Below are positions 2,620 to 24,336 of a stretch of 29,256 nt of DNA, piece after piece. Position 1 is the stretch's first letter; every line of letters begins with the position of its first letter. The notes beneath the pieces were generated by a model. The model was not told the DNA's origin, did no database searches, and saw only the letters and a list, made by a program, of their open reading frames with translations. Source of the DNA: Macrostomum lignano (taxonomy: Eukaryota); contig NIVC01004991.1 of NCBI GenBank assembly GCA_002269645.1, positions 1 to 29,256 of the forward strand. Reading direction: 5' to 3'. Made by a program: the position numbers and the translations under genes.

Positions 2620-3528
2620 TGTGACCCTGTTTCACTCCATGAGTCTCTTCAGGTGTACTGTCGCTCTTCCGTAGTCTCTACAGGTGTAGTGTCACTCTCT
2701 TCCTTAGACTCTTTAGGTGTACTGTCACCTGGGTTTTTTTGTGCGAATGGGTGCGAATAGCATCCTGGTCTTAAAAATTGCACCCTGAAATTTGACTCAG
2801 GGTGCGAAAAGCGCACCCAAATTTTTGCAAGGATGTGATGCGGGTTTTACAATTTAGTGTTTTACTGTTATGGACATCTTAAGTCCGTAACTTCGTATTC
2901 TTAGAATTAGCCAGTAATTTTTTGAATCTTTAATTAATGTAAAGCAATTAAGTTAAGCATTTGGAATTTGGAATTTGGATCATCATTGGATGGTTTGGAT
3001 GGACAAAAACTTTGAAACACTATTAGTATTAGACCAGTTTTTGTCTGCAGCAGTGCAGCGCATCCTGGTCTTGAAAATCGCACCCTGAAATCTAGCACAG
3101 GGTGCGAAATCGCACCCAAGTTATGGACGAAAAAAAAACCAGACTGTCACTCTCTTCCTTAGACTCTTCAGGTGTACTGTCACTCTCTTCCTTAGTCTCT
3201 TTAGGTGTACTGTCACTCTCTTCCTTAGTCTCTTTAGGTGTACTGTCACTCTCTTCCTTAGTCTCTTTAGGTGTACTGTCACTCTCTTCCTTAGACTCTT
3301 CAGGTGTACTGTCACTCTCTTCCTTAGACTCTTCAGGTGTACTGTCACTCTCTTTCTTAGTCTCTTTAGGTGTACTGTCACTCTCTTCCTTAGTTTCCTT
3401 AGGTGTACTGTCACTCTCTTCCTTAGTCTCTTTAGGTGTACTGTCACTCTCTTCCTTAGTTTCCTTAGGTGTACTGTCACTCTTCCTTAGTCTCAACAGG
3501 TGTACTGTCACTCTTTTCTTTAGTCTCT
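2620..3528. repeat. 33-bp minisatellite (gtgtactgtcactctcttccttagtctctttag) in a SEPHS intron, split by a MITE
   Basis: About 3 diverged units at 2620-2728 and about 11-12 units at 3143-3528. Explains the 11-aa periodic ORFs on both strands. Confidence 0.95.
2729..3142. mobile_element. 414-bp MITE with an 8-bp target-site duplication (hAT/P/Merlin-type TSD length)
   Basis: Ends CTGGGTTTTTTT and AAAAAAAACCAG are inverted repeats. Flanked by actgtcac at 2721-2728 and 3143-3150. Internal ~60-bp direct repeat at 2761-2820 and 3061-3119, each with a gcaccctg...cagggtgc palindrome. Confidence 0.85.
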
Positions 3529-4090: not shown

Positions 4091-4320
4091 TTACACCTGC
4101 CCCAATCGCAGCTATTGCGCAGCGCATCTGAAAGCTGCGTACGGCTGTTCAGTCCACGGACTGGGGGTCGGCACACACCCTCAGTTACCCCAGCTAAATG
4201 CTGGCACCCATTTTACAACTGGATGAACTGAAGCAATACAGAGTTAAGTGTCTTGCTTAAGGACACAAATTGCTCCGATTGTGGGATCGGGAATCGAACC
4301 CTCGACCTTCAAGTTGCGAG
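4091..4320 (-). mobile_element. tRNA-derived SINE (5'-truncated), family A
   Basis: B-box GGTTCGATTCCC on the minus strand (4289-4300), followed by the ttgtgtcctt(a/g)agcaagacacttaac core typical of animal SINE superfamilies. Body is shared with the copies at 4452 and 9834. Confidence 0.8.
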
Positions 4321-4451
4321 TCAAATCAAATCAAATCAAAATTAGTATATCGATAGATTTTGCACTGTTTGTCTGCCTGTGTAATTCATTTTTTCAAGAA
4401 TCATCTGGCGAAGAAATAATAGCCGATATGTATCGTTTGTCGATCTGCTTG

Positions 4452-4555
4452 GAACAATTTGTGTCCTTGAGCCAGACACTTAACTCTGCATTGCTTCAAT
4501 TCACCCAGCTGTAAAATAGGTGCCAGCCATTTAGGTGTCTATGGCGACCCCTCCA
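4452..4555 (+). mobile_element. SINE family A fragment, inverted relative to 4091-4320
   Basis: gaacaatttgtgtccttgagccagacacttaactctgcattgcttca...gtgccagc...ggactgaacag aligns with the reverse complement of about 4140-4270. Confidence 0.8.
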
Positions 4556-5992: not shown

Positions 5993-6330
5993 AGTGACTG
6001 TATGTGACTGTATGATGAGGATTAGAAGTTTCTCTATGATGAGGATCATAAGCGACTCTTTAGTGAGGATCAAGAGTGACTTTAGGGAGGAATAATATTG
6101 ACTTTTTAGTGAGGATCAAAAGTGACTCTTTAGTGAGGATCAGGATTGACTCTATGGTGAGGATGAGGAGTGACTCTGGTGAGGATCAGGAGTGACTCTA
6201 CGGTGGGGATCAGGAGTAACTATGGTGAAGATCGTGAGTGACCCTACGGTGGGACTCAGGAGGGACTCTAATGAGGAATAGGTTAACTCTTATGAGGATC
6301 AGGAGTGACTCTCCAATAAGGATTATGAGT
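5993..6330. repeat. Degenerate 24-bp minisatellite (gtgactctatggtgaggatcagga)
   Basis: About 14 imperfect units visible directly in the sequence. Confidence 0.9.
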
Positions 6331-6599
6331 AAATACTTAAGTTAAAATTTCAAATGTGCTCTTTTAGGTGAAAAATTATTAATCAATAAAGCATTTGTTT
6401 ACGTGCATTGCTTCTACTTAGCTAGGCATATATACAAGCTAATTAAAACCTCACGTATTGAATCTGCTAGTAAACTGAGCTAACTAGCACAGTAGCGAAG
6501 ATTTGCTTGATATCTTGTATTTTCGTTCCAGAGCTCATAAGTCAATCGATATTCTGTCAATCTTTGAATAAAACATCAAGTAAGATAAAAAACGTAAAA

Positions 6600-8233
6600 A
6601 TGTCGAATACTGAACAAGAAGCAACCAAATGCATCTCGCGGTTTTGCGAACGGACAGCTGATGGCGAAAGTCCCTTCTCTGGTTTTCCTTTGTGCCAAGA
6701 ACATCTTGACGAAGATTTGCAAAGATGTGAAAATCGAAAGGCTGATATTCTTGAAAAGCTCGATAAGCTCTCTTGCAAGTTGGGGAGACAGTCGCTTCAG
6801 TTAGAGAAGCAGGCTTTGGCTATAGAAATCCAGGAGATTGCCGATATGTTCGATTCCATTCAAGAAAATCTACAGCAGTGGAAAGAAAAACTTATTTCGA
6901 GTGTGCAGAACGTGCACGATGGTGTGTCTGACAGGCTTGAAATTGCATCTGAATCAGACGTATGCGCCAAAGACATAGCTACAGTGTCTAACTCTGGGAA
7001 TATGCGCGACCTGATACAGCTTACAGTGTCCATGGAATCCTGGCTAGATGCTGCCACTAGAAAAACTGCTGAATTTGATCAAAAAGAGCTCAGTTGCGAC
7101 AGCGACAGAACAATAATTTTGGTATTCGTTCTGTCGGAGATGTCGCTGCTGGTGTCCAGCACTTGCAAAATTTGTTTGACAGGCATCTGAACGACGTGAT
7201 GAAGACTTGCTGGCTTGATGATGGGGAAACTAAACCAACAGGAATGTTAGAGCAGGATTCTGAAATAGGCGATTTAACGAGCAAACCAACACATGTTGCA
7301 GCGTGCACTAACACTGCTGGATTTTTCGGCGATGCCTCAGGTCGGGTAGTTCGAGCTGACTCAGTTTGGCATGAAATCTCCCAAACGTTGCCACAGCCTT
7401 GTATTTTTGTGGCCTTTGAAAATCAGAGCGCCGACCATCTATTGGTACTGTCACTTGATGGTTCGGTGAGACTTAAATGTCAAGGTGAGTCAGTCAGCGG
7501 TCAAACCGCTATCAAAGGATTCGAGTGCGACAGTAGACGCCAGCTGTTGTATGTTGGCCGTGCAAATCTTGTTTCTGTTGCTGACTTAAGTGGCACTCTG
7601 CTTCATACTATAGACGGTGAACGTATCAAGCGTCCTTTTGGTACCGTTCACGGCATGACAGCCAACTCTGATAAGTTGTTTATGCTTTGTTCGACAGACA
7701 ACGTATTACTGTGTATTAATAAAGATTCACTTCTAGTCGACTCAGAAATCAGATCTAGAGTATTTAACTGTTTAACATCTGCCTCTGTTGGAGTCGGACT
7801 ACATGGCGGTAAAATTATACTTTCGGATGCAAAATTGGTGACTCAAGGAAAAACTAGGAAGTACAAAACTTCGGTCTACAAGATTTGCAGTGTCAGTGGC
7901 GAACTAATTCGTTGCGTTAATTTTGTGAGTTCTTTGCCTGATGAAAATAGACACATGTGCCAAGTTTCGGTCTCTAACACTGGCTTCTTATTCTTGTGCA
8001 ACTTGGCAACATTGAGAGTTTTATCTGGTTACAATTTTGAGAGTTTAGCTTCTACTTCTCACTCGGAAGCACCAAGCGATCTGGCTCTGCTGCAGTCGCA
8101 GATTATTGTGACAAGTACCGGTACTAATGTATTCTCGAGTCGGTCAAAATTGCACTGTTATAAGTTTCATGGTGAGTTGAAAATTATGCATGTATGTAAA
8201 ATCCTCCACGGTGAAAATTTCAAGAACAGCTAA
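6600..8233 (+). CDS. ZnF-coiled coil-beta-propeller paralogue 1 (intronless; one-base frameshift at about 7081-7085; about 544 aa if repaired)
   Basis: ATG 6600 (MSNTEQ). ORF 6507-7190 and ORF 7094-8233 are consecutive halves homologous to 12506-14104. Adding one A to the A5 run gives EFDQKRAQLRQ, in register with EHEELRAELKQ and IFDDFRARLRE of the paralogues. Confidence 0.85.
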
Positions 8234-8634
8234 ACCATAAATTTAGCCGTTATTCATGGCTTTATTAGCTTAATTAGCTCGTAGCACGCTGTGTTTTAAT
8301 AATTTGTGTTTTTACACTTCTGATAAGAAATTATGTAACACACGCTTATGCAATTAAAGTAGTCTGTTCATCAAGTCAAGAGCTTCTGTTAACATTTGAT
8401 TTAATGGAACATTGAATGATTTCGAATCTTTGTTGTCTATAAAGTTTCGAAGTTGTAAAGATGGGGATATTGTTGTTTTTATTTATTTCTAATTACAGTT
8501 TGATTATTTGTTCTTTTTAAGTGATTCAATTGAGTTATACGAGCCGTATTTATGTTAGTCGTAGCCCGCTATTGTAAATTATACGTTTAAGTGCCCAGGA
8601 ATAGAAAAAAGGTAGTCGCTGATGTGTAGCTGTC

Positions 8635-8920
8635 TATACTCAGCAACATTGGAAAATTGCCATCACAGAAGATTCCGTCTGTGGTCGCCACTTTTCAAAG
8701 TGTAGGTAAAGTCTCTCAATCTTGCGAGTGACGCAACTTACATGTAGCTACGCCACGCGACAACATTTAGGTTGAGGAATGAAGTGGGGGAATCTCGGTG
8801 TGCGAGGATTAGACGGATTAAAGCTACCCCTCAGTTTTATCGTATCATTTATTTCAGAATTGTCAAAGATAAATGCTCACTGGTGCATATAGTGACGACT
8901 TTTCAATGTTGCTGAGTATA
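8635..8920. mobile_element. 286-bp MITE, Tc1/mariner-like (TA flanks)
   Basis: TATACTCAGCAACATTGGAAA (8635-8655) versus the reverse complement of 8900-8920, TATACTCAGCAACATTGAAAA: 20 of 21 identical, including terminal TA. Confidence 0.85.
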
Positions 8921-9286
8921 CTTAATAGTTATTTATTATTCTATACTGGGGTGGGATATTGGGATATTACAGGTTGTAGCTGTTACAGGGGTGTTTATTT
9001 ATAGTTTAATCCTACTGTTTTGCTACCAAATTGTGACGGGCCTCTTTTGGGGAAATTATACTGCTGCTGTCTAATTTGTTATAAGGGGGGGGGGGCGGGT
9101 CGGGGTTACTGGCTTTTACAAGAATTATTTTGGGAATTTCGTAGGATTTGGGGAGAATATGCAATTTCTACTACTAAAAGGAGTATGCTTTAAAGTTACT
9201 CCTGGTGGCGTGAGTGTCCGAGCGGCAAGACACTATATTTCTACTCAGTCCGGATATCTAAGGAGGGGAAGGGGAATAAGGGCTTC

Positions 9287-9625
9287 GCGGTCGAAAAATC
9301 ACATCGTCGAAAAGCATCCACCATCACAAGCTCGAAAAGTCATAAGCTCGAAAAATCATATCGTCGAAAAGTTTAGCAACCACCATCACAAGCTCGAAAA
9401 CTCACAAGCTCGAAAACTCACATCGTCGAAAACTGATTTAGCAACCACCATCACAAGCTCGAAAAATCATATCGTTGAAAAGTTAAGCAACCACCATCAC
9501 AAGCTCGAAAAATCACATCGTCGAAAACTGATTTAGCAGCCACCATCACAAGCTCGTAAAGTCATAAGCTCGAAAAATCACATCGTCGAAAAGTTTAGCA
9601 ACCACCATCATAAGCTCAAAAAGTC
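9287..9625. repeat. Complex tandem array of cacaagctcgaaaa / cacatcgtcgaaaa / gcaaccaccat modules (probably TE subterminal repeats)
   Basis: Repeated modules visible directly; related aagctcgaaa motifs at about 5155-5200. Explains ORF 9159-9536. Confidence 0.8.
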
Positions 9626-9833
9626 TTAAAGAATTAATTATTTATATTTATATTTATTCATATTTAAAGAATAAAAGTTGCTCTTAGAATAGTCTATGGC
9701 AAAAACTCAAGCCCTACTTATCACAGCTTCACAACAAGAGTAGGCTGGTGTGATTTCAATTCTTGCACCGATTTTTTAAACAAAAATGCTCGAATCGGCA
9801 TTCTGTGTATATTCTGTGATTGTCGACCCACTC

Positions 9834-10000
9834 AGAACAATTTGTGTCGTTGAGCAAGACGCTTAACTCTGCATTGCTTCATTAACTATTAGCTTTAAAA
9901 TGGATGCCAGCATTAGTTAGGGCAGTTGAAAGTGTGTGTCACCCCCAGTCCTTGGACTGACAGCCGTATGCAGCCTTCAGATGCGCTGCGCAAAAGCTGT
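9834..10000 (+). mobile_element. SINE family A copy
   Basis: agaacaatttgtgtcgttgagcaagacgcttaactctgcattgcttca...cccccagtccttggactgacagccgtatgcagccttcagatgcgctgcgcaa matches the reverse complement of 4110-4270. Confidence 0.85.
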
Positions 10001-11754
10001 GGTAAAATCAGGTAATAGAAAGTGGTAAAATCAATTATTAGGGGTATAGGGGTGAAGTTATGTGTGATTATACGAGAGTTGACAAAAAACAAATATACAA
10101 CTTTAAGCGAGAGGGGAGAGAGCGCAATCTGTGTCATACTGCCATAAAAGTCAGAAAAAATAATAATTCTAATAATAATAATAAATAACAATTATTTTCA
10201 TCTGGTATATTGTTTATTATTACAGCTATATCAACATCCATCCTCCATTACACAGCCGAGTGTTTTTCGTTTCAAGCCGTAGCCAGCGGATGAGTTTCAC
10301 TCTCATGGACAGACGCGGAACAAGCATATTTGAGCACTTACTCGTATTCACGTGTAAGCTAAATACGAGTAACATTTTTATTGACTCGGTTGAATTTTTT
10401 ATCGAAGTGTATACAAACTATACTAATGACCCGTGTCCTTAATGAAGTTTTCGTCTTAATAGTCTTAATTTAAGCTTTGTGTCCTCTGTTGCCTCCTTAT
10501 CTTCATTTGTAAAGAATATTAGAATATCCAATTAAGTGAGCCTGTTCAAGTATTTTACTCTTAGCACTGAACTGATCAAATAAAAAATAAGCTCAGATAT
10601 GCAAGCAGATAGCTTAGTAAGTTACTCGTTGCTAGTTAATAAGAAGGTAACGTTCGTTACTTCGTTACCGCTTATCAAAAAATTACCGATATATTGAAAT
10701 TATATTAGTTAAAATGATCATAAAGTTTTTTTGGTAGCAGAAAAAGAAACAAAGCTTATTTTCAATTTCAAGTCAACTAAGGTATCCTATTTTATTTACT
10801 GCTCTACAGATTCGATTAAACGTACAGAAAGAAGCTTGTTTTGCCTACTGAAAGCAGCTAGTAGACTTGTTAGCATCGTGTTTTAATCGATCTCAATCAA
10901 ACGGAAAAGTAACTCTAAAGTAACAAGTACTTATCGCTACTTAGTTTCTGGCACCGATAATAGAATGACTAAGGTATGCCACTCAAAAAATGCGCTCATT
11001 TACTCTCTAAGTATAGCGACAATAGTTTTTGCACTTAAACTTGTAAAACTAATAAATTTTACAAGACTTCTGACTTTCTGTAAGCAGAGTCTCACCAAAC
11101 CCATTAATTGTCCTAGATTCTAAGTGATTTTTTATGAAATCCTAAAGGTCTTAAAGACTGAAGATAGCGCTCTTGATACCAGCAAGGCTGATGAAATTGT
11201 TACCTTATTTTCCTACTATTGTTTTTGTTGACGTTTATTTTCCTAAGAATTTATGTCATAAAATGTTGCTACTTCGTCCATCTCTGATACATGTATACGC
11301 GATTGCGATTTTTATGTATCCATTGATATGTTATACTATATGTTATATGTTATATCAACTCAACAGTGACATGAAAAGTTTTTAGTTCAGACTATTCTGA
11401 ACATTTTTCTTTAAATTTTATTAGTAAGCATTAGTAGCGGAAAGTTAAGTTGATACTATGCTTAGTTTTGTGTTTATGATTTTATTTTATGTCGTAGCTT
11501 AACCTTTTCATGTAACGTTTTTTGCGTCTTGCATGCAGCCTTCTACATCTCTGTCAGATTCTTACAATAAATATGCCGCGCACAGCTGAATGAGTATCTA
11601 CTAAATTCAATAGAAAAATTAATTGGTTCATTTTTGATGTCATTTTTTTTCATATAAAACTAGTATAATACTCGTAATAATAAAAAACTGATTTACCTGA
11701 CCAACTGCCCGGAAAGTGCCCGTCAACATAAGCTCATAAAGTTCATAAGCTCAT

Positions 11755-12040
11755 GAGCCCGAGTAGCCTATGCACAAAAATGACACGTCATTCTGCTCAC
11801 AGTAATACCGGGAAGCTGGGTTTGGCAATAAGAGGGACACAAATTGGACTTAAGAGAACGAGCAAGGGGATGGTTAGGGATTATTATGTCAACCTAAGCT
11901 CATAAAGTAGAGTCCCTAATTATCCCATTGCTTGTTTTTTCCTATCCCAAGTCGAATTTGCATCGCTCTTTTTGCCAAACCTAGCTTCCTAGTGTCATTG
12001 TCAGTAGAATATTATTTGTGTACATAACTTACTCGGGCTC
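11755..12040. mobile_element. Foldback/MITE with long imperfect inverted arms
   Basis: Arm 11755-11880 (gagcccgagta...ggaagctgggtttggcaa...ttaggga) is the imperfect reverse complement of 11913-12040 (tccctaa...ttgccaaacctagcttcc...tactcgggctc). Confidence 0.8.
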
Positions 12041-12505
12041 CACTTTATGATCCTAAGTTAACAGCCCATTTAAAGTGCCAAATGGAAAGATGTGTAAATT
12101 TTTATGCAGCGTTCTAGCCTACTTTTCAAGCTTTGAAGTACGTATAGGTTTTAGTTCAGCCAATTTGCCAAGAAAATGAGCCCACGAGCGTATATTTTGT
12201 CCTTATTAGGTATACAATGTATACGCAGTTTGCTAGGGACGATTTAAAGCCGTTCTTTCTACGTTGTTGATATACGAGCTATTACAACTGCTGTGTAAAG
12301 TAATTTCGATGGCATATGATATAGAAAATTCATAAAGCTGCTGAAGCTTCTTAAATCCAAGTAGTGATGTTTCTTTTGATAGTTATTTTCTCTTTAATAT
12401 TTGGTAGGATTTGTTTATAGATTTCTCTAGCAACTATTGAACACATATGGGTATTAATTTCAATAAATTGAAGGCTAACCGGTTGCTTTAAATTGTTTTC
12501 TTTGC

Positions 12506-14104
12506 ATGCCGAAAATGTCAAGTGAACAGCAAATCTGCATTGCTAGATCCTGCGATCGTCCGGCTGAAGACACGAGTCCATACTCTGGTTTTGCTTTCTG
12601 TCGGCAGCATCTTGCCACTGAGATTCAGCGTCTAGAGAAACGACAACAAGAACTGCTAGATAAGCTTGACAAACTTAGCAACTGTTCAGAAAGACAGGCA
12701 ATGCGTCTTGGTCAACAAGTTTTGATTGTTGAGATGCAGGAGATTACAGACATGTTTGAAGCTGTTCATAATAGACTGCACCAGTGGAAGGATCGGTTGG
12801 TGTCGCATGTGCAAAAGATCCATGACAATATTGCTACCACGCTTAAGGATGTAGACGAGGCCGATGCTTGTAAGCAGGAACTAATGCAGGCTCGGGATTC
12901 GGGACAGCTGCGCAAAGTGATGGAGCTTGTTGTTTCCATGGAATCATTCGCTGATGACGCTATGGACCGATTGCCAGAGCATGAAGAACTTCGAGCCGAA
13001 TTGAAGCAAGATGCTCCCAATCGAATCATTGGCGATGTGTCAGTTGGAGTACAGCAGCTTCAGTTCAAGATCGATCGACATTTCACAGATTTGACACAGC
13101 ACTGTAAGCTTAAAGACATGCCTTCTGATGACTCACCGCAGTGCAATGTGTGCAAGTTCGATAGCACTGTCTCCGAGCTTCCAAGTGGACCTCGGTACAT
13201 AACTTTGTGTCAAAACACGAAAAATTATGCTGCCAACCATACAGGAGTGATTATTCCTGCTAAACAAGCTGATAAGAGAAGTTTAGAACTGCCAGAACAG
13301 TGCTTATTTATAGCATTTGATAGGAACAAGGCGGATTATTTGTTGGTGATATCACTAAACAGACGTGATTCTATCGATGAGCTAAAGTATCGCTGCGAAC
13401 AGTTTAACTGGAGCAAGGACATATATGGCATTCATTGCGACAGCAATCGGCAGCAGCTGTTTATAGCTCAGGATCACGCTGTGACAGTGACAGACCTGTG
13501 TGGCCGAATTGTTAGAGTGGTGACTTCTGATCTGTTCGGTTGGCCTGTTGGAAAGATTTCTGGAATCTCTTGCAACGGAGACAAAGTTTTTGTGCTAGTG
13601 TTGGGCAGCCGCAACCAGAAGGTGCATTCATTTAGCAAGAACTCCGGAAATTTGGAGTCCAGCCTTGATTTAAAAGGCCATTTTGATGGCGACTTGCGCA
13701 AAATCTGCCTGCAAGAGAGCAAGATTTGGCTAGCTGATTGGAAATACCCGAAAGTTTACAAAGTTTGCGGCATTTCTGGGAAGTTAATTGAAACCATTGA
13801 TTGCATTGAATCATGTGTTGGTGATATTAAGAAAACGAAATTTTCGCCAATACACATTTGCACTGATGACAGAGGCCTTTTGTTTGCTAGCCTGATGTCG
13901 GCAAATAGCGTAGAAATTTTTGTTGGAGATTCCGTTATTATTAAGTTTCTGGTAGATTTCAACATCGAAGGCGAAGAAAACGACGACTGCTTTGATCGCC
14001 CGGCAGACATGATCATTTTTAACGACGAGACAAAGAACTGCAAGAAGTTAATAGTTTGCGATTATGCTAACGAGAGGCTCTGTATTTTCTTGCTTTCCAC
14101 TTAA
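12506..14104 (+). CDS. ZnF-coiled coil-beta-propeller paralogue 2 (intact, intronless, 532 aa; may start at ATG 12515); RING-less TRIM-NHL-like architecture
   Basis: Long ATG-initiated ORF with an N-terminal C-x4-C-x15-C-x2-H motif, a helical heptad-like region at about aa 35-190, and a beta-rich C-terminus ending in an NHL-like DRPADMIIF...LIVCDYANERLCIF. Confidence 0.9.
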   Translation: MPKMSSEQQICIARSCDRPAEDTSPYSGFAFCRQHLATEIQRLEKRQQELLDKLDKLSNCSERQAMRLGQQVLIVEMQEITDMFEAVHNRLHQWKDRLVSHVQKIHDNIATTLKDVDEADACKQELMQARDSGQLRKVMELVVSMESFADDAMDRLPEHEELRAELKQDAPNRIIGDVSVGVQQLQFKIDRHFTDLTQHCKLKDMPSDDSPQCNVCKFDSTVSELPSGPRYITLCQNTKNYAANHTGVIIPAKQADKRSLELPEQCLFIAFDRNKADYLLVISLNRRDSIDELKYRCEQFNWSKDIYGIHCDSNRQQLFIAQDHAVTVTDLCGRIVRVVTSDLFGWPVGKISGISCNGDKVFVLVLGSRNQKVHSFSKNSGNLESSLDLKGHFDGDLRKICLQESKIWLADWKYPKVYKVCGISGKLIETIDCIESCVGDIKKTKFSPIHICTDDRGLLFASLMSANSVEIFVGDSVIIKFLVDFNIEGEENDDCFDRPADMIIFNDETKNCKKLIVCDYANERLCIFLLST

Positions 14105-14493
14105 ACCGATGGATCAAGCTTAGCTCAAGTAAAGCGGTTATTGACCGAAGAATGTGAATATCGTAACTCGTCGTTTGTAACAGTTTTCTCAAAACACATT
14201 CTTTTACTTGAAGATATATGTATACCTAATATTTCATTTATAAATTTTATAAATATTTATATTAATCTTAATTTTGGTGCTTGCTTATCTTAAATCTTTT
14301 TAATTGCAAGCAGAATGTTCAATCGCCATAGCGTACAGAATTTTTCACGTTTTTTGCTACGCTGCATTTTTACATATCTATTGTACTTTCAGTACCGCAT
14401 GGCAAGTGTTTGTCGTATTTAACAGTTAAAATTTATTTCTTTATTTATTAGTAATCGTTACACATTGTTTTTTGGTTCCAAGTAGCTCGTACT

Positions 14494-15507
14494 TATACTC
14501 AGCAGCAGTCAAAAGTGCTATCCAACTTCCACTTCTCAATTAAAATTCAACCCACGAGTTTTACGTAACTATGTAGCCAAGTCAAGGGACAGTAACAGGG
14601 TAACAGTCTATCTCAATAGAGTGCTTTATTTTTAGTTTTTTTCGGTAATGTAGGAAAATAGCCAAATCAATTTGCAAAATTACCGATTCGGAGTTACCAA
14701 AGACCAAGTTAAGTGCATCATAGTTAATTTAAGTAGCAGAATCGTTTGGTTCTGTATACTTTTTATGCCCATGTACTCTGCCAAGCGCAGGCAGTCTTCT
14801 CTTTGCTCAAGTGCGTCTTTCAATCGCTGCTTAATCCTCAGCGGATATTCTGGCTCGGGCGGCAGCCATTTACTGTTGAGTTGGCATTGTCCCACCAGGT
14901 TTGGCCTTTTGTATCCATCGTTGTCACTGCGCAACAGATTAGCGCTCTTATTGGCTAATTTACAATTTGAACTGGTGTTTGCACTTGACTTGGTTAGATA
15001 ATTAACTGGTTTTTGACCTTGCATTGTTATAGTATCCTCAGGAGAATTTTTATAACAAAAAACATCAGCCCTAAAGGCCAGCTATATCGCCTAAGATATC
15101 TGTATCTCCTTTGAGCTTTGGCATCAACGCCTCCCTTTAGGCCATTATTTAATCCTATTTCTCCCTTCGATCTACCTTTGGCTTGGCCTACCAAAAACTT
15201 CAAAATGAACCTTCTAAATGAAACTTCCAAATATCTCATTAACACTCCCTAAACCGCCACAGCATTTCAGCAATTCCCCCATAAGCTTTGACATGTCAGG
15301 GATCCTCCCTGAGAGCCTCAGCAGATTTGGCTATTTGCCAGATAAACTGAATTTTATGCATTTGGGATGTGGAACTTAAGTTGGATATAGTACTACGTGA
15401 CCGAAAATGCCTATAAAGTGTGTACAGTTTTTGTAAGCTATCTAAAGTGCAAAATTTTCGACTTGCGTGAAGGGTAGCACTAGCACTTTTGACTATTGCT
15501 GAATATA
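14494..15507 (-). mobile_element. Internally deleted Tc1/mariner (IS630-like) DNA transposon, about 1014 bp
   Basis: TIR TATACTCAGCAGCAGTCAAAAGTGCTA (14494-14520) versus the reverse complement of 15481-15507: 24 of 27 identical, with TA flanks. Contains ORF 14680-15024. Confidence 0.75.
14680..15024 (-). pseudogene. 114-aa ORF, probable N-terminal HTH remnant of a Tc1/IS630-type transposase
   Basis: ATG in ACAATG context. YPLRIKQRLKDALEQREDCLRLAEYMGIK resembles recalled transposase HTH segments (Y..D.R.RI..A.E..E.Y..IA..LGV). No DDE domain follows. Lies inside the TIR pair, with AATAAA on the minus strand at 14625-14630. Confidence 0.5.
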
Positions 15508-16588
15508 CGCGCCAGAAAATTCAAGATTTTCTGTCGTTGTGGTGCTACTAAACTTAAGACACAATAAGTACGTCGTAAAATATTAGACTCATTTACTCGC
15601 CATATATTTTTGTAGGGTCCCACCTCGAGAACAAACTCTATGTGCCTTGCGTCCTATTGTCATGCAACTATATAGTCCATTGTGTAATAATTTACGCATG
15701 CTCAACATCTGCATCGTAGCTCTCGTCATTGAGGCACAGTGCTTTTCGAAAGCTGTAAATCTTACACTGCGTCCCATTGCTAGCCGTGTGTGCAGGCCTA
15801 AGTTGTCTCGTCTTGTTTGTGGGGTTGTTTGAAAGGCTCATTTACAGGTATATAACTTTAAGTGAGTTGTGCGTACTTTTACGCTTAGAATTCACTCGTA
15901 ATTAAAATAAAGCAAGTGTATCTTGCTTCTCTTGCTTGTATTTTTTGTGTGCTTATTATTGTAAAATTAATTCTTTTGGCGCTTTTGCAGCATGTTTAAT
16001 AATAATTTGATAAGTTTAATACCGAGTGAAAAAGTTTGCTTAAAAGTTCGGAATGCTTGTGCTTTTATTTTGATTCAACTCCAAACTTCTTTAGCTGTGT
16101 ATTTCAACATCTAGCTAGGTTATTGCAATATTAAATGAAGTTTTAGTATATGTTTGCCTTTATAATAGATCGTCCACTGAAAAGTTGCAAAGATTTACTT
16201 TGATACCTTAACTAATTGTAGCTCGTATCTAACTGATAGCTAAATAGAACTTCCAATGTGTGTACTAAACTTGTGTGCTTCGAATGGTTAAGACCAAAAG
16301 GACTAAAAACTGAGAAACTGTTTGTGGCCTATTGCAAGGTCTAAACTCACTTTAAGACTCTAATGTACGAGCTCGTAGAAGCACGCAGGAGTTCCCTGAA
16401 ATTGTCTACTAGCTAGCCGCCCTGACCCCTGATCCTTGAGATGAGATACTCGTAGAGCTGGTAGAGTTGCAGTGTGGTGACAATATAAGATGTCGCCTAC
16501 TGATTACTTGTACTTGCATTGGTTCAGACTAATTACAGAAAAATGATTGAATTTTTGTTTATATTCATGCCGGACGCTAACCGCAGCC

Positions 16589-17650
16589 ATGTCCAGCGAT
16601 ACCCACCGCATGTGCATTGTCAGATCCTGTTACCAAGCGTCTGATAGCGTGAGTCCTTATTCCGGATTCGCTCTGTGTCAGCAACATCTTGGTAGCGATC
16701 TTGAACGGCTTGAACAGAGAGAAACTGAAGTTTTAAATAAACTGAATACTGTCGCGGCTAATTCGGAGAAGCAAACTTTTCGACTAGAACAGCAAGCGAT
16801 TCAAATAGAAATGCAAGAAATTGACGACATGTTTGAATCTGTGCAGGCGAGGCTCCAGCTGTGGAAAGAGCAGCTGGTTTCCAGTGTCCAACAGATCCAC
16901 GATGCATTTGCTAGTAGGCTGAGAGATGTCGCCGATGCTGAGCATTGTCTGAAAGACATTCATTCGGCACGGTCCAACGGGAAGTTGCGCAAAGTGATGA
17001 AGCTAATACTGTCTGTTGAAAGCTTTGCCGATGAAGCCGTCGATAGATCGGCAATTTTTGACGACTTTCGAGCAAGGCTTCGTGAAATTACAATGGAACG
17101 CGATAAGGATAATGACTCTGATGACGATGATGGTGATGAAGATGAAGACGAGTCTTCGAAAACTACTATCTATCGATGCATTGGTGATGTGTCATCTGAG
17201 GTGCAGATGCTACAATCACTGATTGACAAGCATATGCATAGTGTAATGGAGTATTGCCAAATTGACGGCGAATCGCCAGACAAGCCAGTTTGTCCGCCTT
17301 TAAAGCAGTCAATTACTCTTCCAGGAGAGCCGCGTTATCTAACTCTGTGTACGAACACAAGTGGATACGTGTGCAACATGAATGACTGCGTGGTTTCGCT
17401 CAAGTCTGTTGCGAACGCCTCTTATCGAGAATTACCAATGCCTACTATCTTTGTTGCGCTAAGGCCAGGTAGCAGTTCTTTACTGCTGGGCGTTTCTTTT
17501 AACATGCGTCGCAAGTTTAAACTAATCTGCGAAAAATTCGACTGGAACAAAGCTATTACCGGCCTTCATTGTGACAATTTGCGTCAGAGATTATTTTTAG
17601 CTCAGGAGCACGCAGTGACAGTGTCAGATTTGACAGATTTGTGTTTTTGA
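16589..17650 (+). pseudogene. ZnF-coiled coil-beta-propeller paralogue 3, C-terminally truncated (353 aa)
   Basis: ATG 16589 (MSSDTH); same zinc-finger motif and coiled coil; acidic insert DNDSDDDDGDEDEDE. Homology to copy 2 ends at AVTVSDLTDLC, where copy 2 continues for about 200 aa. Confidence 0.85.
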
Positions 17651-20404
17651 ATTGTATAATCCTATACTTCCATCTTAGGAATACGTCGAAAAGCATTAGT
17701 TTATCGACGCCTAGTTGCTTTAGCTTTGTTTGTTAGTGTTTGAAGTCTAGCTTTACACTGTATACTCGTACTTTTATTAAACCTAAATATGATACTTGTA
17801 CTTCGAAGCAGTGCCCTGCTGTTCCTTGACTCTGGTTGTTGTTTTTTTATTCACATTATCTGCTTCTAAGTTTAGTCCGCCAAAAATATCTAATTAGCGA
17901 AGATACTAAACAAACAAAACAGTACTTGCGATTCTGAAAAAGATATTTAAGGCGGAATGGTTAATAAAAAGACGACTGAATGATTAATTGTTAATCGTTT
18001 ATAAAAAGTATTTTGTTATAACAAGTTAAACACACTTATTTTGATAAAAATTGTCGAACCAAGCGCCATCTGAGTGCCATTAAAAGCGCGCGAGTATGAT
18101 AATTTCTGAACTTGTTTTTAGAAAACCACAGCTAACTTTCTTTAAATCTTCCAGCTAAGCGTCATGTACATCCTGGCCTATTCTATGTTGAAATATCCTT
18201 TGAATTTTACTAATAGGTTTCATTAATACCAATTCAGGCATTATATCATTATTGTTGATTTTTAGTATGAGTCGAAATCATAAGCTGCTGTATCTTGCGT
18301 TTGCTATGCATACTTGCTTATTTACGAGCGTATTTGTTTTTTTGTTGATCGAAAACTGTATTTTTCGCTCTTTTAGAATTAGACTATACTAACTATGGGG
18401 GGTAACCTAATAATTAAGCGTTTCCTATTTATTTTTGTTTGCTAATTAATCTTGTGTAAATTTTAATTATGGGCCCGATTTGTTAGTTTTGATTGCTACA
18501 GTACATGCTTCTATTACTGTAGCATTTAAATACATTGTGACGGGGGACTTGTGGAAAACTTCATTGTTTTACTATCATTTTTACTATTAGTAGACTACTA
18601 CATAAGTGTATCATATTTTGTATGAATTCTGTGTACATTCATTGAATCGGCTTTTATATGTCGGCAAGTGATGAATTTTTAACAAATCAATAATTTTGCC
18701 CAGCGCCCATCGTAACTCTCAGCCAATTACAATTCGCTGTATCATCTATCGTTTTATATTAACTGTTCGTTTTTCGTCGCTACTCTAAATAAAATAAAAT
18801 AAACTTGGCCAACTAAGCAAGCAAAATATATCAATTCAATTGAATATTGGACTGCGCTATACTTGCATTTTTCTTCGGTCTTGTTCTGCCAAGGACTGCC
18901 AGATTAAATTGTCACAACATATATGATTTCAACGTACGTTTTTTCACATTTTTACTGTGCACTCAAGTGCTATTACAAAGATATAGTCACTTACATGGCA
19001 GTTACATGTAAGTTTTTGCTTTGTTTAACTTTTTTACTAAACAGTTAGATAAAAATGTGCACGTACAGTTCAGTCCAGATCGATCTTGGCTCGCGCGTCC
19101 GCTCTGCAGCTTTTACCTGGGCTTCACGCTCGTACATGTAGCTATAACTCAATTCTTACCTAATTCATGCCACAGAACGACTAAATAAATAGAAATACAA
19201 GGATCATATTAAAGGATCTGAATAGGGCCGCATATATCAAATAAGCCCGCAGAAAGCACTCAGATTTTGATTGATACATCGACCTACATGTAGATTGATA
19301 CGCGTACTTTTCAACTATACAGCTGCATAAAAATGGACCAGGAAGGTGATTTAATGTGAACTTATACCGTGCCCACAACTACTGAGGAAAAAACAGCATT
19401 CTTTCTGTTTAATTACTCGTGTACATGTACAATATAAACAGCTAGTAGTTAAAGTCTGCAGAGCTCTGCTCAGTGCTTACGGTCCCAATGCCTAAATGAG
19501 TGTTAACATCACCGATTCCATTAAAAGTGTAGGAATGGGAATAGGAATAGGACTAGTAATAAGGAATTTAGTCAGAATTATTGCTTAATCAATTATTGCA
19601 CAGCTCCCCACTGCATTTACATGATCCATGCATATGGCGACGCCAAATGATGGAGCTGAGTATTTGTTACTCGCCACACTGCACCTCACCGATCGCGTAC
19701 ATTATACATGTGTAAGCACCACTGCAGTGGCAGTTTTAAAAACATTACGGTAATGCCGCCATTTTCATGCAGTTAGCACTACAAATACTCTGACATTGAA
19801 ACTTATTTGATAGTATTGTAATTTTACAAGTCGAAATTAATTATTATTGCTAGTATTATAATGCATGAGTATTCTAAATGTCAAACTCTAAAGTTGGTTT
19901 ACAAAATTACTGTTTTGTTAAAGTTTGTTTTTTCTTTAAGGGGTTTTTAATTTTCTTTATTTCTTATAAAATCGTGTTTCCTGTAAAGCGTTAGCAAGTG
20001 AATAGGGTAGGAAAGAATTGGAGTAGTGCACATTGTGCTTGCGCAAGCAGTGTATTTGTATTATAGGCTTCTTGTCGGGATAATTTAATTTGCCTATAAA
20101 AACTCTTTATTTGACCTATCTAGTCTATTGTTTACCGAGTAAATTAATTAGGACATACACCGACACCGAGTCACCGACTTACTACCTATATTGAACTTGA
20201 ATGAACATTAGGCCTAATTAAAATAGTAAAATATTCAATAAATCCCATATACTTAATCAAACGTAACGACGAACGGGATAATTTAAGCTGCACCTTAAAT
20301 TTTTGGCTTGGTGTTTTCAGTTCTAGGATGGTTTTGTAGGATGAGTTTTTCTTTGTGACCAGTGACCACTGACCACCCAGTTAAAAGCCTTTCTGACTAG
20401 TCTA

Positions 20405-20539
20405 ATGCCTGAGCAAGTTGTTCGAATTGGTGTGACAGATTTTGTCACATATACATATGAAGATTTGCAGGATGCAACCAACAGTAGATTCATTCAAAAA
20501 ATATTACAACTAAGGAAAACTGTGGATTCAATTTCTTAT
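20405..20539 (+). CDS. ASAP1: ASAP-family ArfGAP, first coding exon (N-terminus/BAR domain)
   Basis: MPEQVVRIGVTDFVTYTYEDLQDATNSRFIQKILQLRKTVDSISY resembles recalled ASAP1 MPDQISVSEFIAETTEDYNSPTTSSFTTRLHNCRNTVTLLEE. GTATGT donor at 20540. Likely acceptor(s) at 20319-20326 imply an upstream UTR exon. Confidence 0.85.
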
Positions 20540-20720
20540 GTATGTCAATTTTTTTATTGCCTAATTTTTTATATACAACCCATTTTACCTTTTTGACTAT
20601 TGCCTAAGCAATAAATAGGGCCCTATCTTTTTATGACAGTATGACATGAATCCTTATTAATATTCGGCTAGAGCCTAGGTATGTTACAAATTTGAATATC
20701 AAAAGAATATGCTATTATAT

Positions 20721-21207
20721 GCCTGGATGGAATTCTTGCAGAAAAATCACAACGCGTTATGCAATTGAGCGAAAAAAATGCGATTTTGCATAAAAAAATC
20801 CAGAAAAAATGTGTTGCAGAATTTCAGACAAAATTTCTAATTCTTAATATATGCAAAAGTGCGCTTGAGATATTGGATTTTGCAAAAGATAATCTTACCA
20901 GCTAATATCACAAAGAAAAATAAAAAGTAAAAACTAAATAAGGCACAAAAGTAAAAATTCAAAAAAAATTCTATAAAAAGTAGAAACTCGTAACATTCTC
21001 TAACATTCATATTTGGACAAAAATTCAAATTACTACATTATCTTAGAATGCATTTTTCATTATTGTCTTTCGTTATTTTGTTATTTCGTTATTTTGCAAT
21101 GTGCTAAGTACCAAAATAAAAAATGCGACCAATAAAAAATATTTTGCGTGCCATAAAAAATCGCATAATTCCATTTGACTTAAGAAATACAAGAATTCCA
21201 TCCTGGC
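20721..21207. mobile_element. 487-bp MITE in ASAP intron 1 with an apparent 6-bp TSD
   Basis: GCCTGGATGGAATTCTTG (20721-20738) versus the reverse complement of 21190-21207, GCCAGGATGGAATTCTTG: 17 of 18 identical. ttatat flanks at 20715-20720 and 21208-21213. Confidence 0.8.
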
Positions 21208-21764
21208 TTATATGCTTATTTTATTATACGCAATTTTGAATTTTTCAAAAAAAGAATTCTTGCATAAAAGTTATTATGCCTCTATGTGTGCTTTCAAATT
21301 TGTCTACAGGTGTATGTTGAAAATGGGCCTACCTGCTTGCATACTTTAAAAATATATATATAGTACTTATGTACATTTGTACAAAAAGCTATTTGCTACA
21401 TAATTATAATGCATAGGCCTACAATACAGTTATAGTAATAGTAACTTCTATATTTCTTCAGTTTACCTTGTGCTCTTGATTGTTTACTTTCTTATGAAAT
21501 TTAGTCTAGACTTCTCTCTCTTCCTATTTTCATTCTGATTAGTTTTCACTTTAACTTCCTAGCCTTTTCTATCCTTTTATTCCATTTGTATAGCTAGCCC
21601 CCTTCTTTTTGTATGCTCAAATTAAAAGCCAACTTCTCAGTTCTTAATGCCCTAAACCCTAATTACTTCTTTTATTTTTAACCAAAATGTCAATATTCAA
21701 ATCTTAATCTATTTTAAATCTTTACCCTACATCAAAGTGACTAATTAATATTTCAATTATCAAT

Positions 21765-22575
21765 TTCCAATTCTAATTCAAATTATATATTCTATTCTTA
21801 ACATTAACTAGAGATGTTCCAAAATTTTGATTTAAATTTAAATTTTCTAAAATTTGCATTTTTAAAGCAAATTTTAATTTCTAAATAATTTGGAAATCAA
21901 AATTTTAGAAGTGCCTACTTCCAAACTTCTTATCTGATGTTAGTTTTTTTAGAACTTTGTTACTGCTTTCATTAGTGATATTATTACATTTTTTACATGT
22001 AAAACTATTTGAATTTGTTAAAACTGTTCCATACATATAGAACATACATATAGGGCTGTATGCAGAAAGCTCTGTCTAGGGTAGTCCGGTCTTGAAAAGC
22101 TAGTCTGGACTTGGATTTGGTATGCAGAAATGCAAAGTTAGACCGGTCTACTATAGCAGAACTAGGGTAGCTGGACCATAGACTATAGACTGAACTACCC
22201 AAGTCTGGACTAGCTAGTCTAGACTAAGCTTTCTGCATACGACCCATAGTTTGTGGAACTGTAAATTTTTCAATTCTAATTCAAATTATATATTCTATTC
22301 TTGACATTAACTAGAGATGTTCTAAAATTTCCATTTAAATTTAAATTTTCTAAAAGTTGCATTTTTGAAGCAAATTTTAATTTCTAAAGAATTTGGAAAT
22401 CAAAATTTTAGAAGTGCCTACTTCCAAACTTCTTATCTGATGTTAGTTTTTTTAGAACTTCATTACTGCTTTTATTGGTGATATTATTACATTTTTTACA
22501 TGTAAAACTATTTGAATTTGTTAAAACTGTTCCATACATATAGAACATACATATAGTTTGTGGAACTAAATTTTT
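21765..22575. repeat. Local tandem duplication of a ~305-bp intronic segment (copy 1 about 21765-22267 including a MITE; copy 2 about 22268-22575)
   Basis: Near-identical sequence from caattctaattcaaattatatattc to atagtttgtggaact; about 9 differing sites by eye. Confidence 0.95.
22053..22245. mobile_element. 193-bp MITE with a 3-bp TSD (PIF/Harbinger-Tourist-like)
   Basis: GGGCTGTATGCAGAAAGCT versus the reverse complement of the right end, GGGTCGTATGCAGAAAGCT: 17 of 19 identical. ATA duplicated at 22050-22052 and 22246-22248. The empty site is preserved in duplicate copy 2. Confidence 0.92.
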
Positions 22576-24336
22576 GTAAATTTTGTTGCACTTTAAAGCT
22601 GTAAAAGCATCTGCTGATATATTGCACATTTTTGCATAATACAATACAATAATGCATATGTACATTTACCATACATGTACATGCATTATTGTTTACACAA
22701 TCTCAGTTTATTGCTAGTCATGCAGTGATACATGTATATTTTAACTAAATTTTATACATGTACAACTGAGTACACGTAGTTTTTGCATTGAAAAAAGTTT
22801 TTGCATTTAAAGTGGCAATGAGGGATTCTACTTATTTAGTGGCTAAAAAAACTAACTTCTGCTAAACATACATATATTTTGTTTTGCATGAGCAGTAAAT
22901 TTAAAGTAAAAAAGTGAGTGTTGGTTGTACTAAACTTTGTTTTTCTGAATTTTGATTTCAACTATATAGCTGCAGTATTAATTAATTATTTAAAATTGTA
23001 TTAATTTGACAAATAAATAAAATACAACTTAAGAAAAGAAAATTAAGCAATTATTTATACCTATTAAGAAGATAGTATAAAGGGGTTCTATAGTGCCAGC
23101 TGGTTATTAGGGATTGCTAATTGAGTTTGTTGATAGATGGGACCTAGTGCTATAGTATAGTTAGTCTATAGTGCTGTGGGTGATATTGCTAGTATATGTA
23201 TCTTAGCTACACAAATGATCTGATTGGATAGCTGTCTATGAGCCCATGTTGGCATAGTGTAGATTGGTTTTTTATAAGATATTATGTCATTTTTGGGAAC
23301 AGTAAGGCTGCTAATGGGTTAGCTACATTTATTATATAATAGCAACAGCAATGCAATGAGATTAAGAAGTAATGATAGTAGATAGTGGATAATAGTGCTT
23401 TCAGGCATCTCTATTAATAGCATAAAAGCATGTAAAACATTCACAAAGAGGCTGCTCAACATCTCATTGGACTATTTGTGGAAGGGTTTTTGTTGGTTAG
23501 TGAATAAGAGCAAGGCAATGGTTCTTTTAGTAGGATAATTAATGGAAATTAGATTGGGGATTCAAACAAAGAAAAAGAAGAGGCATGATTTGTATCATTG
23601 TCATCATCACCATATATTTATAGATTTGTAAACGGTTTCTAGAGTTTTCTAGAAAGATTGAATGCATCCTAACAAACTGGTTTTGACTTTTAGAAATCTA
23701 ACGAAATTTTGAAAAAGTTATTAAAGTATGATATAGTAGCAGTATTCATAGAATATTTACTATGTACTAACAAGGCATTTAGGAACAATAGTCTATAATT
23801 TCTCAGTAATATTGAGTATCTATTTATTTATTAATATAAATAAGAGCTTATCTAAGCCATATAATAATAGGCTCTTAGCATAAAAAATGTTTGCTAAACA
23901 AATATTAAAAAATAAAATAATTTAATTATTGCCATTAGTATTTTTTGTCCATTTTTTAAATCTTGTTATTCTGTTTGAATATATAAAGTATATATAAATT
24001 TCAAAACTGTACACAGAATCTTGTTTCAAGCACAAAGAATTGTTATTTGAGCAAATAAAAATCTAAGTTATTTTAACTGGACTCTAAGCTACAATACTAT
24101 ATAACCTCCTGAGTAAATAGTCTTGTCTTCTCTGAACTTTGTCATGCTAATAAATATTTTTATAATTTAATTTTTGTTTTAATACCAAGGGTAAGATGAT
24201 AGTGTATCATCTTTAACATGTATATATATACTCTTAACAGATTCTAAAATAGTATTTCCTCAATTCAAGACAAAAAATTCAAAGTAGAATACAAACAAAA
24301 TACAAATTTTAAATAAAAAATACCTCTCATTAATAG

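What the first reader, a model, noticed from the sequence alone, without database searches (positions are those of the whole stretch)
6600..17650. Tandem trio of intronless ZnF-coiled coil-beta-propeller genes with an unusual N-terminal finger
Seen: three same-strand paralogues about 4-6 kb apart share an invariant C-x4-C-x15-C-x2-H motif containing SP(Y/F)SGF, then about 150 aa of coiled coil, a linker of variable length, and a propeller that diverges strongly between copies. They lack introns although both neighbours are intron-rich. Established: B-box/coiled-coil/NHL (TRIM-like) families are expanded in marine invertebrates and often act in RNA binding or immunity. Inference: this single four-ligand finger is not a canonical two-zinc B-box or RING, so this may be an undescribed, retroposition-derived, birth-and-death family with a conserved oligomerisation module and a variable recognition module.
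Basis: partly seen in the sequence, partly recalled or inferred. Interest (0 to 1): 0.7.

Follow-up and report, generated by a model that had tools for sequence, protein, structure and literature searches.

The report
Flatworm zinc-knuckle, coiled-coil, NHL-propeller gene array
The window holds the cut-down remnant of a six-gene tandem array from the flatworm Macrostomum lignano, encoding an uncharacterised family that looks like TRIM-NHL proteins with the RING lost and a one-zinc knuckle where the B-box would be; it is a modestly interesting variant of a known kind, not a new class.

Summary
The three same-strand paralogues and their C-x4-C-x15-C-x2-H motif are real. The window is the whole contig NIVC01004991.1 of Macrostomum lignano. 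Only copy 2 (12506-14104, 532 aa) is intact here.

- Copy 1 has a 1-nt loss in an A-run (A5 here, A6 in two sister contigs).
- Copy 3 is cut after about 346 codons by an 8.5-kb microhomology deletion. That deletion also removed copies 4 and 5 and nearly all of copy 6 of a six-gene array that two sister contigs keep.

AlphaFold (pLDDT 84) shows a short knuckle whose last two ligands start about 165 residues of helices, followed by a beta-propeller. The propeller's best structural and profile matches are the NHL domains of Thin, TRIM71, TRIM2/3 and Brat.

The finger matches no Pfam family and scores 0.1% against a B-box by hhalign, so descent from a B-box is inference. About 25 subfamilies exist. 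Seventeen of the 20 looked up are M. lignano; three are unnamed environmental contigs.

Tandem DNA duplication, gene conversion and deletion shape the arrays. Retroposition is not supported, and neither is a "conserved coil, fast propeller" selection pattern (omega about 0.3-0.4 in both). Function is untested.

The parts
6597..8233 (+). Copy 1 of the family. It reads in two frames here (6597-7190, then 7094-8233) because of a 1-nt deletion in the A-run 7081-7085. It is an intact 562-codon frame in sister contig NIVC01000168.1.
   Evidence: Against the sister haplotype it has 5 synonymous and 12 nonsynonymous differences and three indels, which suggests relaxed constraint.
6627..6701 (+). Copy 1 zinc knuckle, CISRFCERTADGESPFSGFPLCQEH (C-x4-C-x15-C-x2-H).
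7081..7085 (+). A5 homopolymer carrying the frameshift of copy 1 (A6 in L005 and L001). Either a long-read homopolymer error or a haplotype-specific mutation.
12506..14104 (+). Copy 2, the only intact member in the window: a single 532-codon reading frame (a second ATG lies at 12515).
   Evidence: The identical protein is encoded on three contigs. There are 0 nucleotide differences from the sister haplotype in 1599 nt, against 6.2 per kb in the intergenic DNA.
12536..12610 (+). Copy 2 zinc knuckle (residues C11, C16, C32, H35).
   Evidence: AlphaFold pLDDT is about 90. C32 and H35 sit at the N-terminus of helix 33-58, preceded by a short hairpin. The four ligands are invariant or nearly so across 21 family members.
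12602..13105 (+). Copy 2 helical region (residues 33-200; four helices of 26, 70, 35 and 23 residues). Inferred to be a coiled coil that dimerises.
   Evidence: Dimerisation is inferred, not tested.
13151..14101 (+). Copy 2 NHL-type beta-propeller (residues 216-532; 26 strands).
   Evidence: Foldseek top hits are the NHL domains of Thin, TRIM3, TRIM2, TRIM71, Brat and Mei-P26, with TM 0.72-0.76 normalised to the target. The family profile against PDB gives Thin 1e-24 and TRIM71 1e-20. Pfam NHL scores above its cut-off in the intact copy 3 protein (25.7 against 20 bits).
16589..17650 (+). Copy 3, truncated. About 346 homologous codons (knuckle, helices, acidic linker, first third of the propeller), then 4 out-of-frame codons and a stop. 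It is an intact 538-codon gene in both sister contigs.
   Evidence: Against the sister haplotype it has 10 synonymous and 4 nonsynonymous differences.
16613..16687 (+). Copy 3 zinc knuckle, CIVRSCYQASDSVSPYSGFALCQQH.
17626..17645 (+). Deletion junction. Window position 17632 corresponds to 8167, and 17637 to 16695, of locus L006 (contig NIVC01002962.1), so 8,527 bp are missing. Both parental sites share the microhomology ATTTGTG, and the junction carries a 9-nt duplicated filler.
17637..17678 (+). Remnant of the last array member (copy 6): its final 13 codons and stop (ICVFELYNPILPS*), out of frame with copy 3.
   Evidence: (end of P0009).

Best explanation
The region is a tandem array of intronless genes of a Macrostomum lignano family.

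Protein architecture: each protein has (i) an N-terminal single-zinc CCCH knuckle, (ii) about 165 residues of long helices that most likely form an antiparallel dimeric coiled coil as in TRIM proteins, (iii) a short variable linker, and (iv) an NHL-type beta-propeller that serves as the ligand-binding module.

Origin and function: the most economical origin is a TRIM-NHL ancestor of the Brat, Thin or TRIM32 kind. That ancestor lost its RING, and its B-box decayed to (or was replaced by) one zinc site that caps the start of the coiled coil. With no RING, the proteins cannot be stand-alone E3 ligases. They would act as dimeric adaptors that hold two propellers apart and bind a protein or RNA ligand.

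Locus history: the array grew by tandem DNA duplication and is being remodelled by gene conversion and deletion. This particular contig is a haplotype, or assembly variant, in which a microhomology-mediated 8.5-kb deletion removed the 3' part of copy 3, copies 4 and 5, and all but the last 14 codons of copy 6.

Shown: homology, array structure, deletion, fold, NHL affinity, purifying selection on copies 2 and 3.
Inferred: zinc binding, dimerisation, TRIM ancestry of the finger, adaptor function.
For: - Organism and locus: 100% and named hits to M. lignano. The window is contig NIVC01004991.1.
- Sister contigs carry six single-frame paralogues.
- The window is 99.4-99.9% identical to NIVC01002962.1 on both sides of an 8,527-bp gap, and the junction shows microhomology.
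- Fold: an AlphaFold model built from 25 family sequences has pLDDT 83.6 and pTM 0.72, with the knuckle at about 90 and C32/H35 at a helix N-terminus.
- Propeller: Foldseek's best hits are six TRIM-NHL propellers. The family profile gives Thin 1e-24, TRIM71 1e-20 and TRIM2/3 1e-15, against 1e-7 or worse for natural NHL domains outside the TRIM group (NHLRC2 9e-8) and about 1e-9 for designed Pizza propellers.
- Finger: it sits where TRIM-NHL proteins have B-box2. Its spacing between ligand pairs (15-16 residues) equals the spacing between pair 1 and pair 3, the first zinc site, in the TRIM28 B-box2 sequence returned by PDB (16 residues).
- Automatic names: UniProt calls divergent members 'B box-type', 'RING-type' and 'TRIM2'.
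- Selection: copy 2 has 0 differences in 1599 nt between haplotypes against 6.2 per kb nearby. Copy 3 has 10 synonymous and 4 nonsynonymous differences. dN/dS is 0.31-0.39 among copies 4-6.
Against: - No sequence method links the finger to a B-box. Pfam gives no hit at E<=10, and hhalign against the TRIM28 B-box2 gives 0.1%.
- The family profile does not pick up any TRIM coiled coil in PDB.
- One C-x2-C member scores just below threshold against an unrelated zinc-ribbon model (Zn_ribbon_12, 24 against 27 bits).
- One member has Y in place of the His ligand.
- Most family propellers are acidic or neutral (pI 4.4-6.5), unlike what I recall of the basic RNA-binding faces of Brat and LIN-41. RNA binding is therefore doubtful.
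- Blade number is unresolved: 26 strands over 317 residues fit six blades plus extras, or seven.
- There is no expression or functional data.
- The A5 frameshift and the deletion could be assembly artefacts of a small contig.
Confidence: 0.6

Rival explanations
1. The knuckle and helical module is an independent invention, or comes from an unrelated zinc ribbon, and was joined to an NHL propeller by domain shuffling. On this reading the family only converges on the TRIM-NHL layout.
For: - Sequence searches find no B-box or RING signal.
- The only weak hits are to zinc ribbons and to the two ends of the THAP domain (Zn_ribbon_12 E=3e-5, below its cut-off; THAP11 E=1.2).
- The helical region finds no TRIM coiled coil in PDB.
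Against: - The domain order and the finger's position match TRIM-NHL proteins.
- The propeller's closest relatives are specifically TRIM-NHL propellers.
- The ligand-pair spacing fits one B-box zinc site.
- B-boxes and TRIM coiled coils diverge quickly, so negative sequence searches on 25 residues carry little weight.
Confidence: 0.25
2. The genes are processed retrocopies, which would explain why they are intronless beside intron-bearing neighbours.
For: Every copy examined is a single uninterrupted reading frame, and both neighbours have introns.
Against: - The copies are arranged head-to-tail in the same orientation in at least two arrays, which is the signature of unequal crossing-over and not of retroposition.
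- No poly(A) tract follows copies 1 or 2.
- No intron-bearing parent was found among the members read.
- At most, the founder of the whole family could have been a retrogene, and that cannot now be tested.
Confidence: 0.07
3. The trio in this window is decaying junk: pseudogenes of a family that is being lost, with no current function.
For: - Two of the three copies are broken in this contig.
- Copy 1 shows 12 nonsynonymous and 5 synonymous differences, three indels between haplotypes, and a read-through C-terminal extension.
- Further broken copies exist elsewhere.
Against: - Copy 2 is intact and identical on three contigs, while the flanking DNA differs at 6.2 per kb.
- Copy 3 is intact in two contigs with a synonymous excess.
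- dN/dS is about 0.3-0.4 across old paralogues.
- About 25 subfamilies keep full-length frames.
Confidence: 0.08

Closest known systems
RING-less TRIM-NHL proteins such as Drosophila Brat, and the TRIM-NHL group in general (Thin/TRIM32, TRIM71/LIN-41, TRIM2/3, Mei-P26)
   Same: The order is zinc finger, coiled coil, C-terminal NHL propeller with no filamin domain. The propeller's best profile and structural matches are exactly these proteins. Like Brat, there is no RING (my knowledge of Brat's domain set).
   Different: There is one four-ligand zinc site in place of one or two two-zinc B-boxes, and no detectable B-box sequence signal. Only the last two blades show clear NHL repeat motifs. The propeller spans 317 residues against about 280. 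The family is found so far in one flatworm and in tandem arrays, not as conserved single-copy genes.
B-box type 2 zinc finger (Pfam PF00643)
   Same: It lies immediately N-terminal to the coiled coil. It has a knuckle, hairpin and helix-start arrangement of ligands. The spacing between ligand pairs is 15-16 residues, as between pairs 1 and 3 of the TRIM28 B-box2. UniProt's automatic rule labels one divergent member 'B box-type'.
   Different: The second zinc site (pairs 2 and 4) is missing. The first pair is C-x4-C or C-x2-C, not C-x2-H. Pfam and hhalign find nothing.
THAP zinc finger (C2CH)
   Same: It has the same ligand types and similar end motifs (C-x4-C ... C-x2-H-[FL]). THAP11 is a non-significant hit on both ends (E=1.2).
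   Different: The spacer is 15 residues against 35-53 in THAP (my knowledge). There is no Pfam THAP hit. A coiled coil starts directly at the last ligands.
Lineage-specific TRIM and NHL gene expansions in invertebrates
   Same: Many tandem paralogues, copy-number variation and pseudogenes.
   Different: There is no evidence here of immune induction or positive selection. Domain-wide dN/dS is 0.3-0.4.

Membership tests
TRIM-NHL (tripartite motif, class with C-terminal NHL) | N-terminal RING finger | tested here: not met
   The proteins start 1-35 residues before the single knuckle. Pfam finds no RING. Some accepted relatives such as Brat also lack it (my knowledge).
TRIM-NHL | One or two B-box zinc fingers (two zinc ions, 7-8 ligands) | tested here: not met
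   Only four conserved ligands. No zf-B_box hit at E<=10 in 21 finger fragments or in 15 full or partial proteins scanned whole. hhalign against the TRIM28 B-box2 gives 0.1%.
TRIM-NHL | Coiled coil directly after the finger, forming an antiparallel dimer | tested here: inconclusive
   Long helices at 33-200 with pLDDT 80-94. The dimer was not modelled, and no TRIM coiled coil was recovered by profile search.
TRIM-NHL | C-terminal NHL-repeat beta-propeller | tested here: met
   Pfam NHL 25.7 bits against a cut-off of 20 in the intact copy 3 protein. PDB profile hits Thin 1e-24 and TRIM71 1e-20. Foldseek TM 0.72-0.76 to NHL domains. Blade number, six or seven, is not settled.
THAP domain | C-x2-4-C-x35-53-C-x2-H with a conserved core between the ligand pairs | tested here: not met
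   The spacer is 15-16 residues. The only match is THAP11, non-significant and split in two (E=1.2).
Processed retrogene | Intronless copy of an intron-bearing parent, dispersed, with a poly(A) remnant and target-site duplications | tested here: not met
   Intronless: yes. But the copies are in tandem arrays, no poly(A) follows copies 1 or 2, and no intron-bearing parent was seen. Target-site duplications were not searched for.
Birth-and-death multigene family | Tandem arrays with gain and loss of copies, pseudogenes, and independent divergence of members | tested here: met
   Six copies against two and a half between contigs that are 99.4-99.9% identical. Truncated, frameshifted and interrupted copies occur. 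Paralogues are 24-52% identical outside the gene-conversion tract of copies 4-6. That tract, between copies 4-6, is a departure from the pure model.

The most novel reading that the evidence does not exclude
The CCCH knuckle with its helical bundle is a previously undescribed zinc-capped oligomerisation domain unrelated to the B-box. The roughly 25 subfamilies of copy-number-polymorphic genes would then form a Macrostomum-specific recognition repertoire, for example in innate immunity or reproductive conflict, in which propellers are exchanged and diversified between array members.
Probability: 0.15. Interest if true: 0.6.

Novelty: new variant of a known kind. Interest (0 to 1): 0.4.

Why it matters
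If the reading holds, Macrostomum lignano carries a large, uncharacterised, apparently lineage-restricted family that shows how the TRIM-NHL scaffold can be reduced to one zinc site, a coiled coil and a propeller.

The arrays show duplication, gene conversion and microhomology deletion between near-identical haplotypes, which makes them a convenient case for studying gene-family turnover in a flatworm with a recently duplicated genome.

For annotation, the work shows three things. Several GenBank gene models in these arrays fuse neighbouring paralogues. This small contig is a structural variant of a larger one. The name 'hypothetical protein' can be replaced by 'RING-less TRIM-NHL-like protein'.

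It answers no long-standing question, and no function is known.

Tried and rejected
- Word-indexed homologue searches returned only the same three proteins for copy 2 and for the 25-sequence alignment, and returned nothing for the N-terminal alignment. They therefore say little about distribution. The exhaustive HMMER search was used for that.
- The first AlphaFold run, with 3 sequences, was too poor to use (pLDDT 54).
- A finger-only profile against Pfam and PDB gave only chance-level hits: WRC, CxC6, LIM-like, ZNF174 SCAN, THAP11.
- A consensus B-box probe returned alignments for TRIM28 only, so no B-box alignment could be built. The single-sequence hhalign was negative.
- dN/dS for the window's own three copies is not estimable because synonymous sites are saturated (pS 0.62-0.98).
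- Literature searches for Macrostomum with NHL or tripartite motif, for TRIM-NHL expansions, and for six locus tags found nothing relevant.
- Rfam and tRNA scans of the window were empty.
- A self-comparison shows that the intergenic DNA between the copies is not duplicated, so the duplications are old.
- I considered non-allelic homologous recombination between copy 3 and copy 6 as the cause of the deletion, and rejected it. The breakpoints are at non-equivalent positions (codon about 346 against the last 14 codons) and the fusion is out of frame.

Full report
**What is in the window.**
- A six-frame ORF list shows three homologous reading frames on the + strand. Copy 1 starts at ATG 6597 and continues in a second frame to 8233. 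Copy 2 is a clean 532-codon frame at 12506-14104. Copy 3 starts at ATG 16589 and stops at 17650.
- Copy 2 is 100% identical to a database protein. The nearest named relatives are hypothetical proteins of the flatworm Macrostomum lignano.
- A look-up of that protein shows that the window is the whole 29,256-bp contig NIVC01004991.1 of assembly GCA_002269645.1. Two larger contigs carry the same locus.
- All three copies have C-x4-C-x15-C-x2-H with SPFSGF or SPYSGF.
- tblastn between the copies and their relatives gives E-values of 1e-36 to 1e-144, so the resemblance is homology.

**State of the three copies.**
- Only copy 2 is intact.
- Copy 1 changes frame at an A-run, 7081-7085. The window has A5 where both sister contigs have A6 and an uninterrupted 562-codon frame. 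This is either a long-read homopolymer error or a private mutation.
- Copy 3 matches the intact 538-residue protein P0002 only to about residue 346.
- The window is 99.9% identical to NIVC01002962.1 up to position 17632 and 99.4% identical from 17637 onward, but 8,527 bp of that contig are missing between these points.
- The missing stretch holds the 3' third of copy 3, copies 4 and 5, and all but the last 14 codons of copy 6.
- Both parental breakpoints contain ATTTGTG, and the junction carries a 9-nt duplicated filler. Window 17637-17678 still reads ICVFELYNPILPS-stop, the end of copy 6, out of frame with copy 3. Such a junction looks like a real microhomology-mediated deletion, but only reads can prove it.
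- The 'trio' is therefore the remnant of a six-gene array.

**The protein.**
- A 25-sequence family alignment gave an AlphaFold model with mean pLDDT 83.6 and pTM 0.72.
- Residues 10-35 (pLDDT about 90) form a knuckle and short hairpin, with C32 and H35 on the first turn of helix 33-58.
- Helices 33-58, 62-131, 135-169 and 178-200 follow. Then 26 strands run between residues 216 and 530.
- Foldseek against PDB puts the NHL propellers of Thin, TRIM3, TRIM2, TRIM71/LIN-41, Brat and Mei-P26 on top, with TM 0.72-0.76 normalised to the target. Seven-bladed WD40 proteins score lower, at 0.55-0.60.
- The family profile against PDB sequences gives Thin 1e-24, TRIM71 1e-20 and TRIM2/3 1e-15. Natural NHL domains outside the TRIM group score 1e-7 or worse (NHLRC2 9e-8), and designed Pizza propellers about 1e-9. 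The sequence signal lies mainly in the last two blades.
- Pfam NHL passes its cut-off in the intact copy 3 protein, though not in copy 2 itself.
- Whether there are six blades with extras or seven cannot be decided from the secondary-structure string alone.

**The finger.**
- Across 21 members only the four ligands are conserved. The first pair is C-x2-C in some subfamilies, one member has a 16-residue spacer, and one has Tyr in place of His.
- No Pfam model of B-box, RING or THAP is hit even at E<=10.
- A finger profile finds only chance-level PDB hits.
- hhalign against the TRIM28 B-box2 sequence gives 0.1% probability.
- Evidence in favour of a B-box remnant is circumstantial. The finger occupies the B-box2 position next to the coiled coil. 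Its pair-to-pair spacing equals that of the first zinc site of the TRIM28 B-box2. UniProt's automatic rules name divergent members 'B box-type', 'RING-type' or 'TRIM2'.
- I therefore describe the family as working like a RING-less TRIM-NHL protein, but I do not file the finger as a B-box.

**Distribution.**
- An exhaustive HMMER profile search of 1.84 billion cluster representatives found about 25 full-length or fragmentary clusters of this architecture. Every other hit among the best 150 was a giant multi-NHL protein that matched only the C-terminal blades.
- Of 20 clusters looked up, 17 are M. lignano and 3 come from short JGI environmental contigs of unknown organism.
- A second array, on contig NIVC01001253.1, has three copies, one of them interrupted.
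- Several deposited gene models fuse neighbouring paralogues.
- No paper mentioning the family was found.

**Evolution.**
- The window's copies are old. DNA similarity is barely detectable (68% over 199 nt) and synonymous sites are saturated.
- Protein identity for the coil against the propeller is 42% and 24% for copies 1 and 2, 42% and 27% for copies 1 and 3, and 49% and 47% for copies 2 and 3. Only copy 1 has an unusually divergent propeller.
- In copies 4-6 the coil and linker are 81-100% identical, while the finger (42-55%) and propeller (45-49%) are not. Synonymous divergence is 0.1-0.27 in the coil against 1.2-1.4 in the propeller, and dN/dS is 0.31-0.39 in both.
- That pattern is a gene-conversion tract and not stronger constraint on the coil.
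- Between haplotypes, copy 2 has no difference in 1599 nt, against 6.2 per kb in intergenic DNA. Copy 3 has 10 synonymous and 4 nonsynonymous changes. Copy 1 has 5 synonymous and 12 nonsynonymous changes and three indels.
- Copies 2 and 3 thus look functional, and copy 1 looks relaxed.
- Nothing supports retroposition: the copies are tandem and same-strand, no poly(A) follows copies 1 or 2, and no intron-bearing parent was found.

**Mechanism.**
- The best-supported reading is a dimeric adaptor. A zinc-stabilised cap starts a TRIM-like coiled coil that presents two NHL propellers.
- Without a RING there is no intrinsic E3 ligase activity.
- Most family propellers are acidic or neutral (pI 4.4-6.5). 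In my view this favours protein ligands over RNA, but the argument is weak.
- Zinc binding, dimerisation, ligand and biological role are all untested.

**Verdict.** It is partly wrong: retroposition and domain-specific selection are not supported. This is a new variant of a known kind, of moderate interest.

Noticed in passing
window 17632-17637, versus L006 8167-16695: The whole window is a small contig that differs from a 103-kb sister contig by an 8.5-kb deletion with a microhomology junction. It is either a structural haplotype or an assembly variant.
   Followed up: yes
L001 12507-19336 (sister contig NIVC01000168.1): Copies 4-6 share a gene-conversion tract covering the coiled coil and linker (dS 0.1-0.27). 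Their fingers and propellers are saturated (dS above 1.2).
   Followed up: yes
L001 12531-17034; L002 10001-41067; L006 10001-16736: Deposited gene models fuse neighbouring paralogues. Examples are a 31-kb 'gene' whose product joins the first and third array members, and a 4.5-kb model joining copies 4 and 5.
   Followed up: partly
window 3143-3528 and 2645-2728: A 33-nt tandem repeat (11.8 copies, 92% matches) lies inside the range of the upstream AIRS/AIRS_C-domain gene. It creates a spurious 165-codon reading frame with an 11-residue period.
   Followed up: no
window 6004-6312: A 24-nt (46 or 70-nt) tandem repeat of about 13 copies ends roughly 285 bp upstream of the copy 1 start codon.
   Followed up: no
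window 8981-9818, 9818-9999 and 4109-4527: About 840 bp are present here and in NIVC01002962.1 but absent from NIVC01000168.1, and contain 49-111-nt tandem repeats (9291-9629). The adjacent 9818-9999 is an inverted 81% copy of 4109-4295, probably a dispersed repeat or transposon fragment.
   Followed up: no
window 20406-27678 (+) and 26718-29026 (-): The downstream neighbours are a BAR-PH-ArfGAP-Ank-SH3 (ASAP-like) gene and, on the opposite strand, a gene seen here as two long low-complexity K/Q/A-rich reading frames that overlap by 16 nt in different frames and have no Pfam domain. The two gene models overlap on the sister contig.
   Followed up: no
window 24679-24982; 21764-22053 and 22267-22556: A (TAGA)n microsatellite of about 76 units, and a 290-bp direct repeat pair (96% identical, 503 bp start to start), both within the range of the ASAP-like gene.
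   Followed up: no
L007 (JGI 3300040775) and L008 (JGI 3300040801): Family members occur on short environmental contigs of unknown organism, one with the C-x4-C-x15-C-x2-H finger. The family may therefore exist outside the sequenced M. lignano strain.
   Followed up: partly
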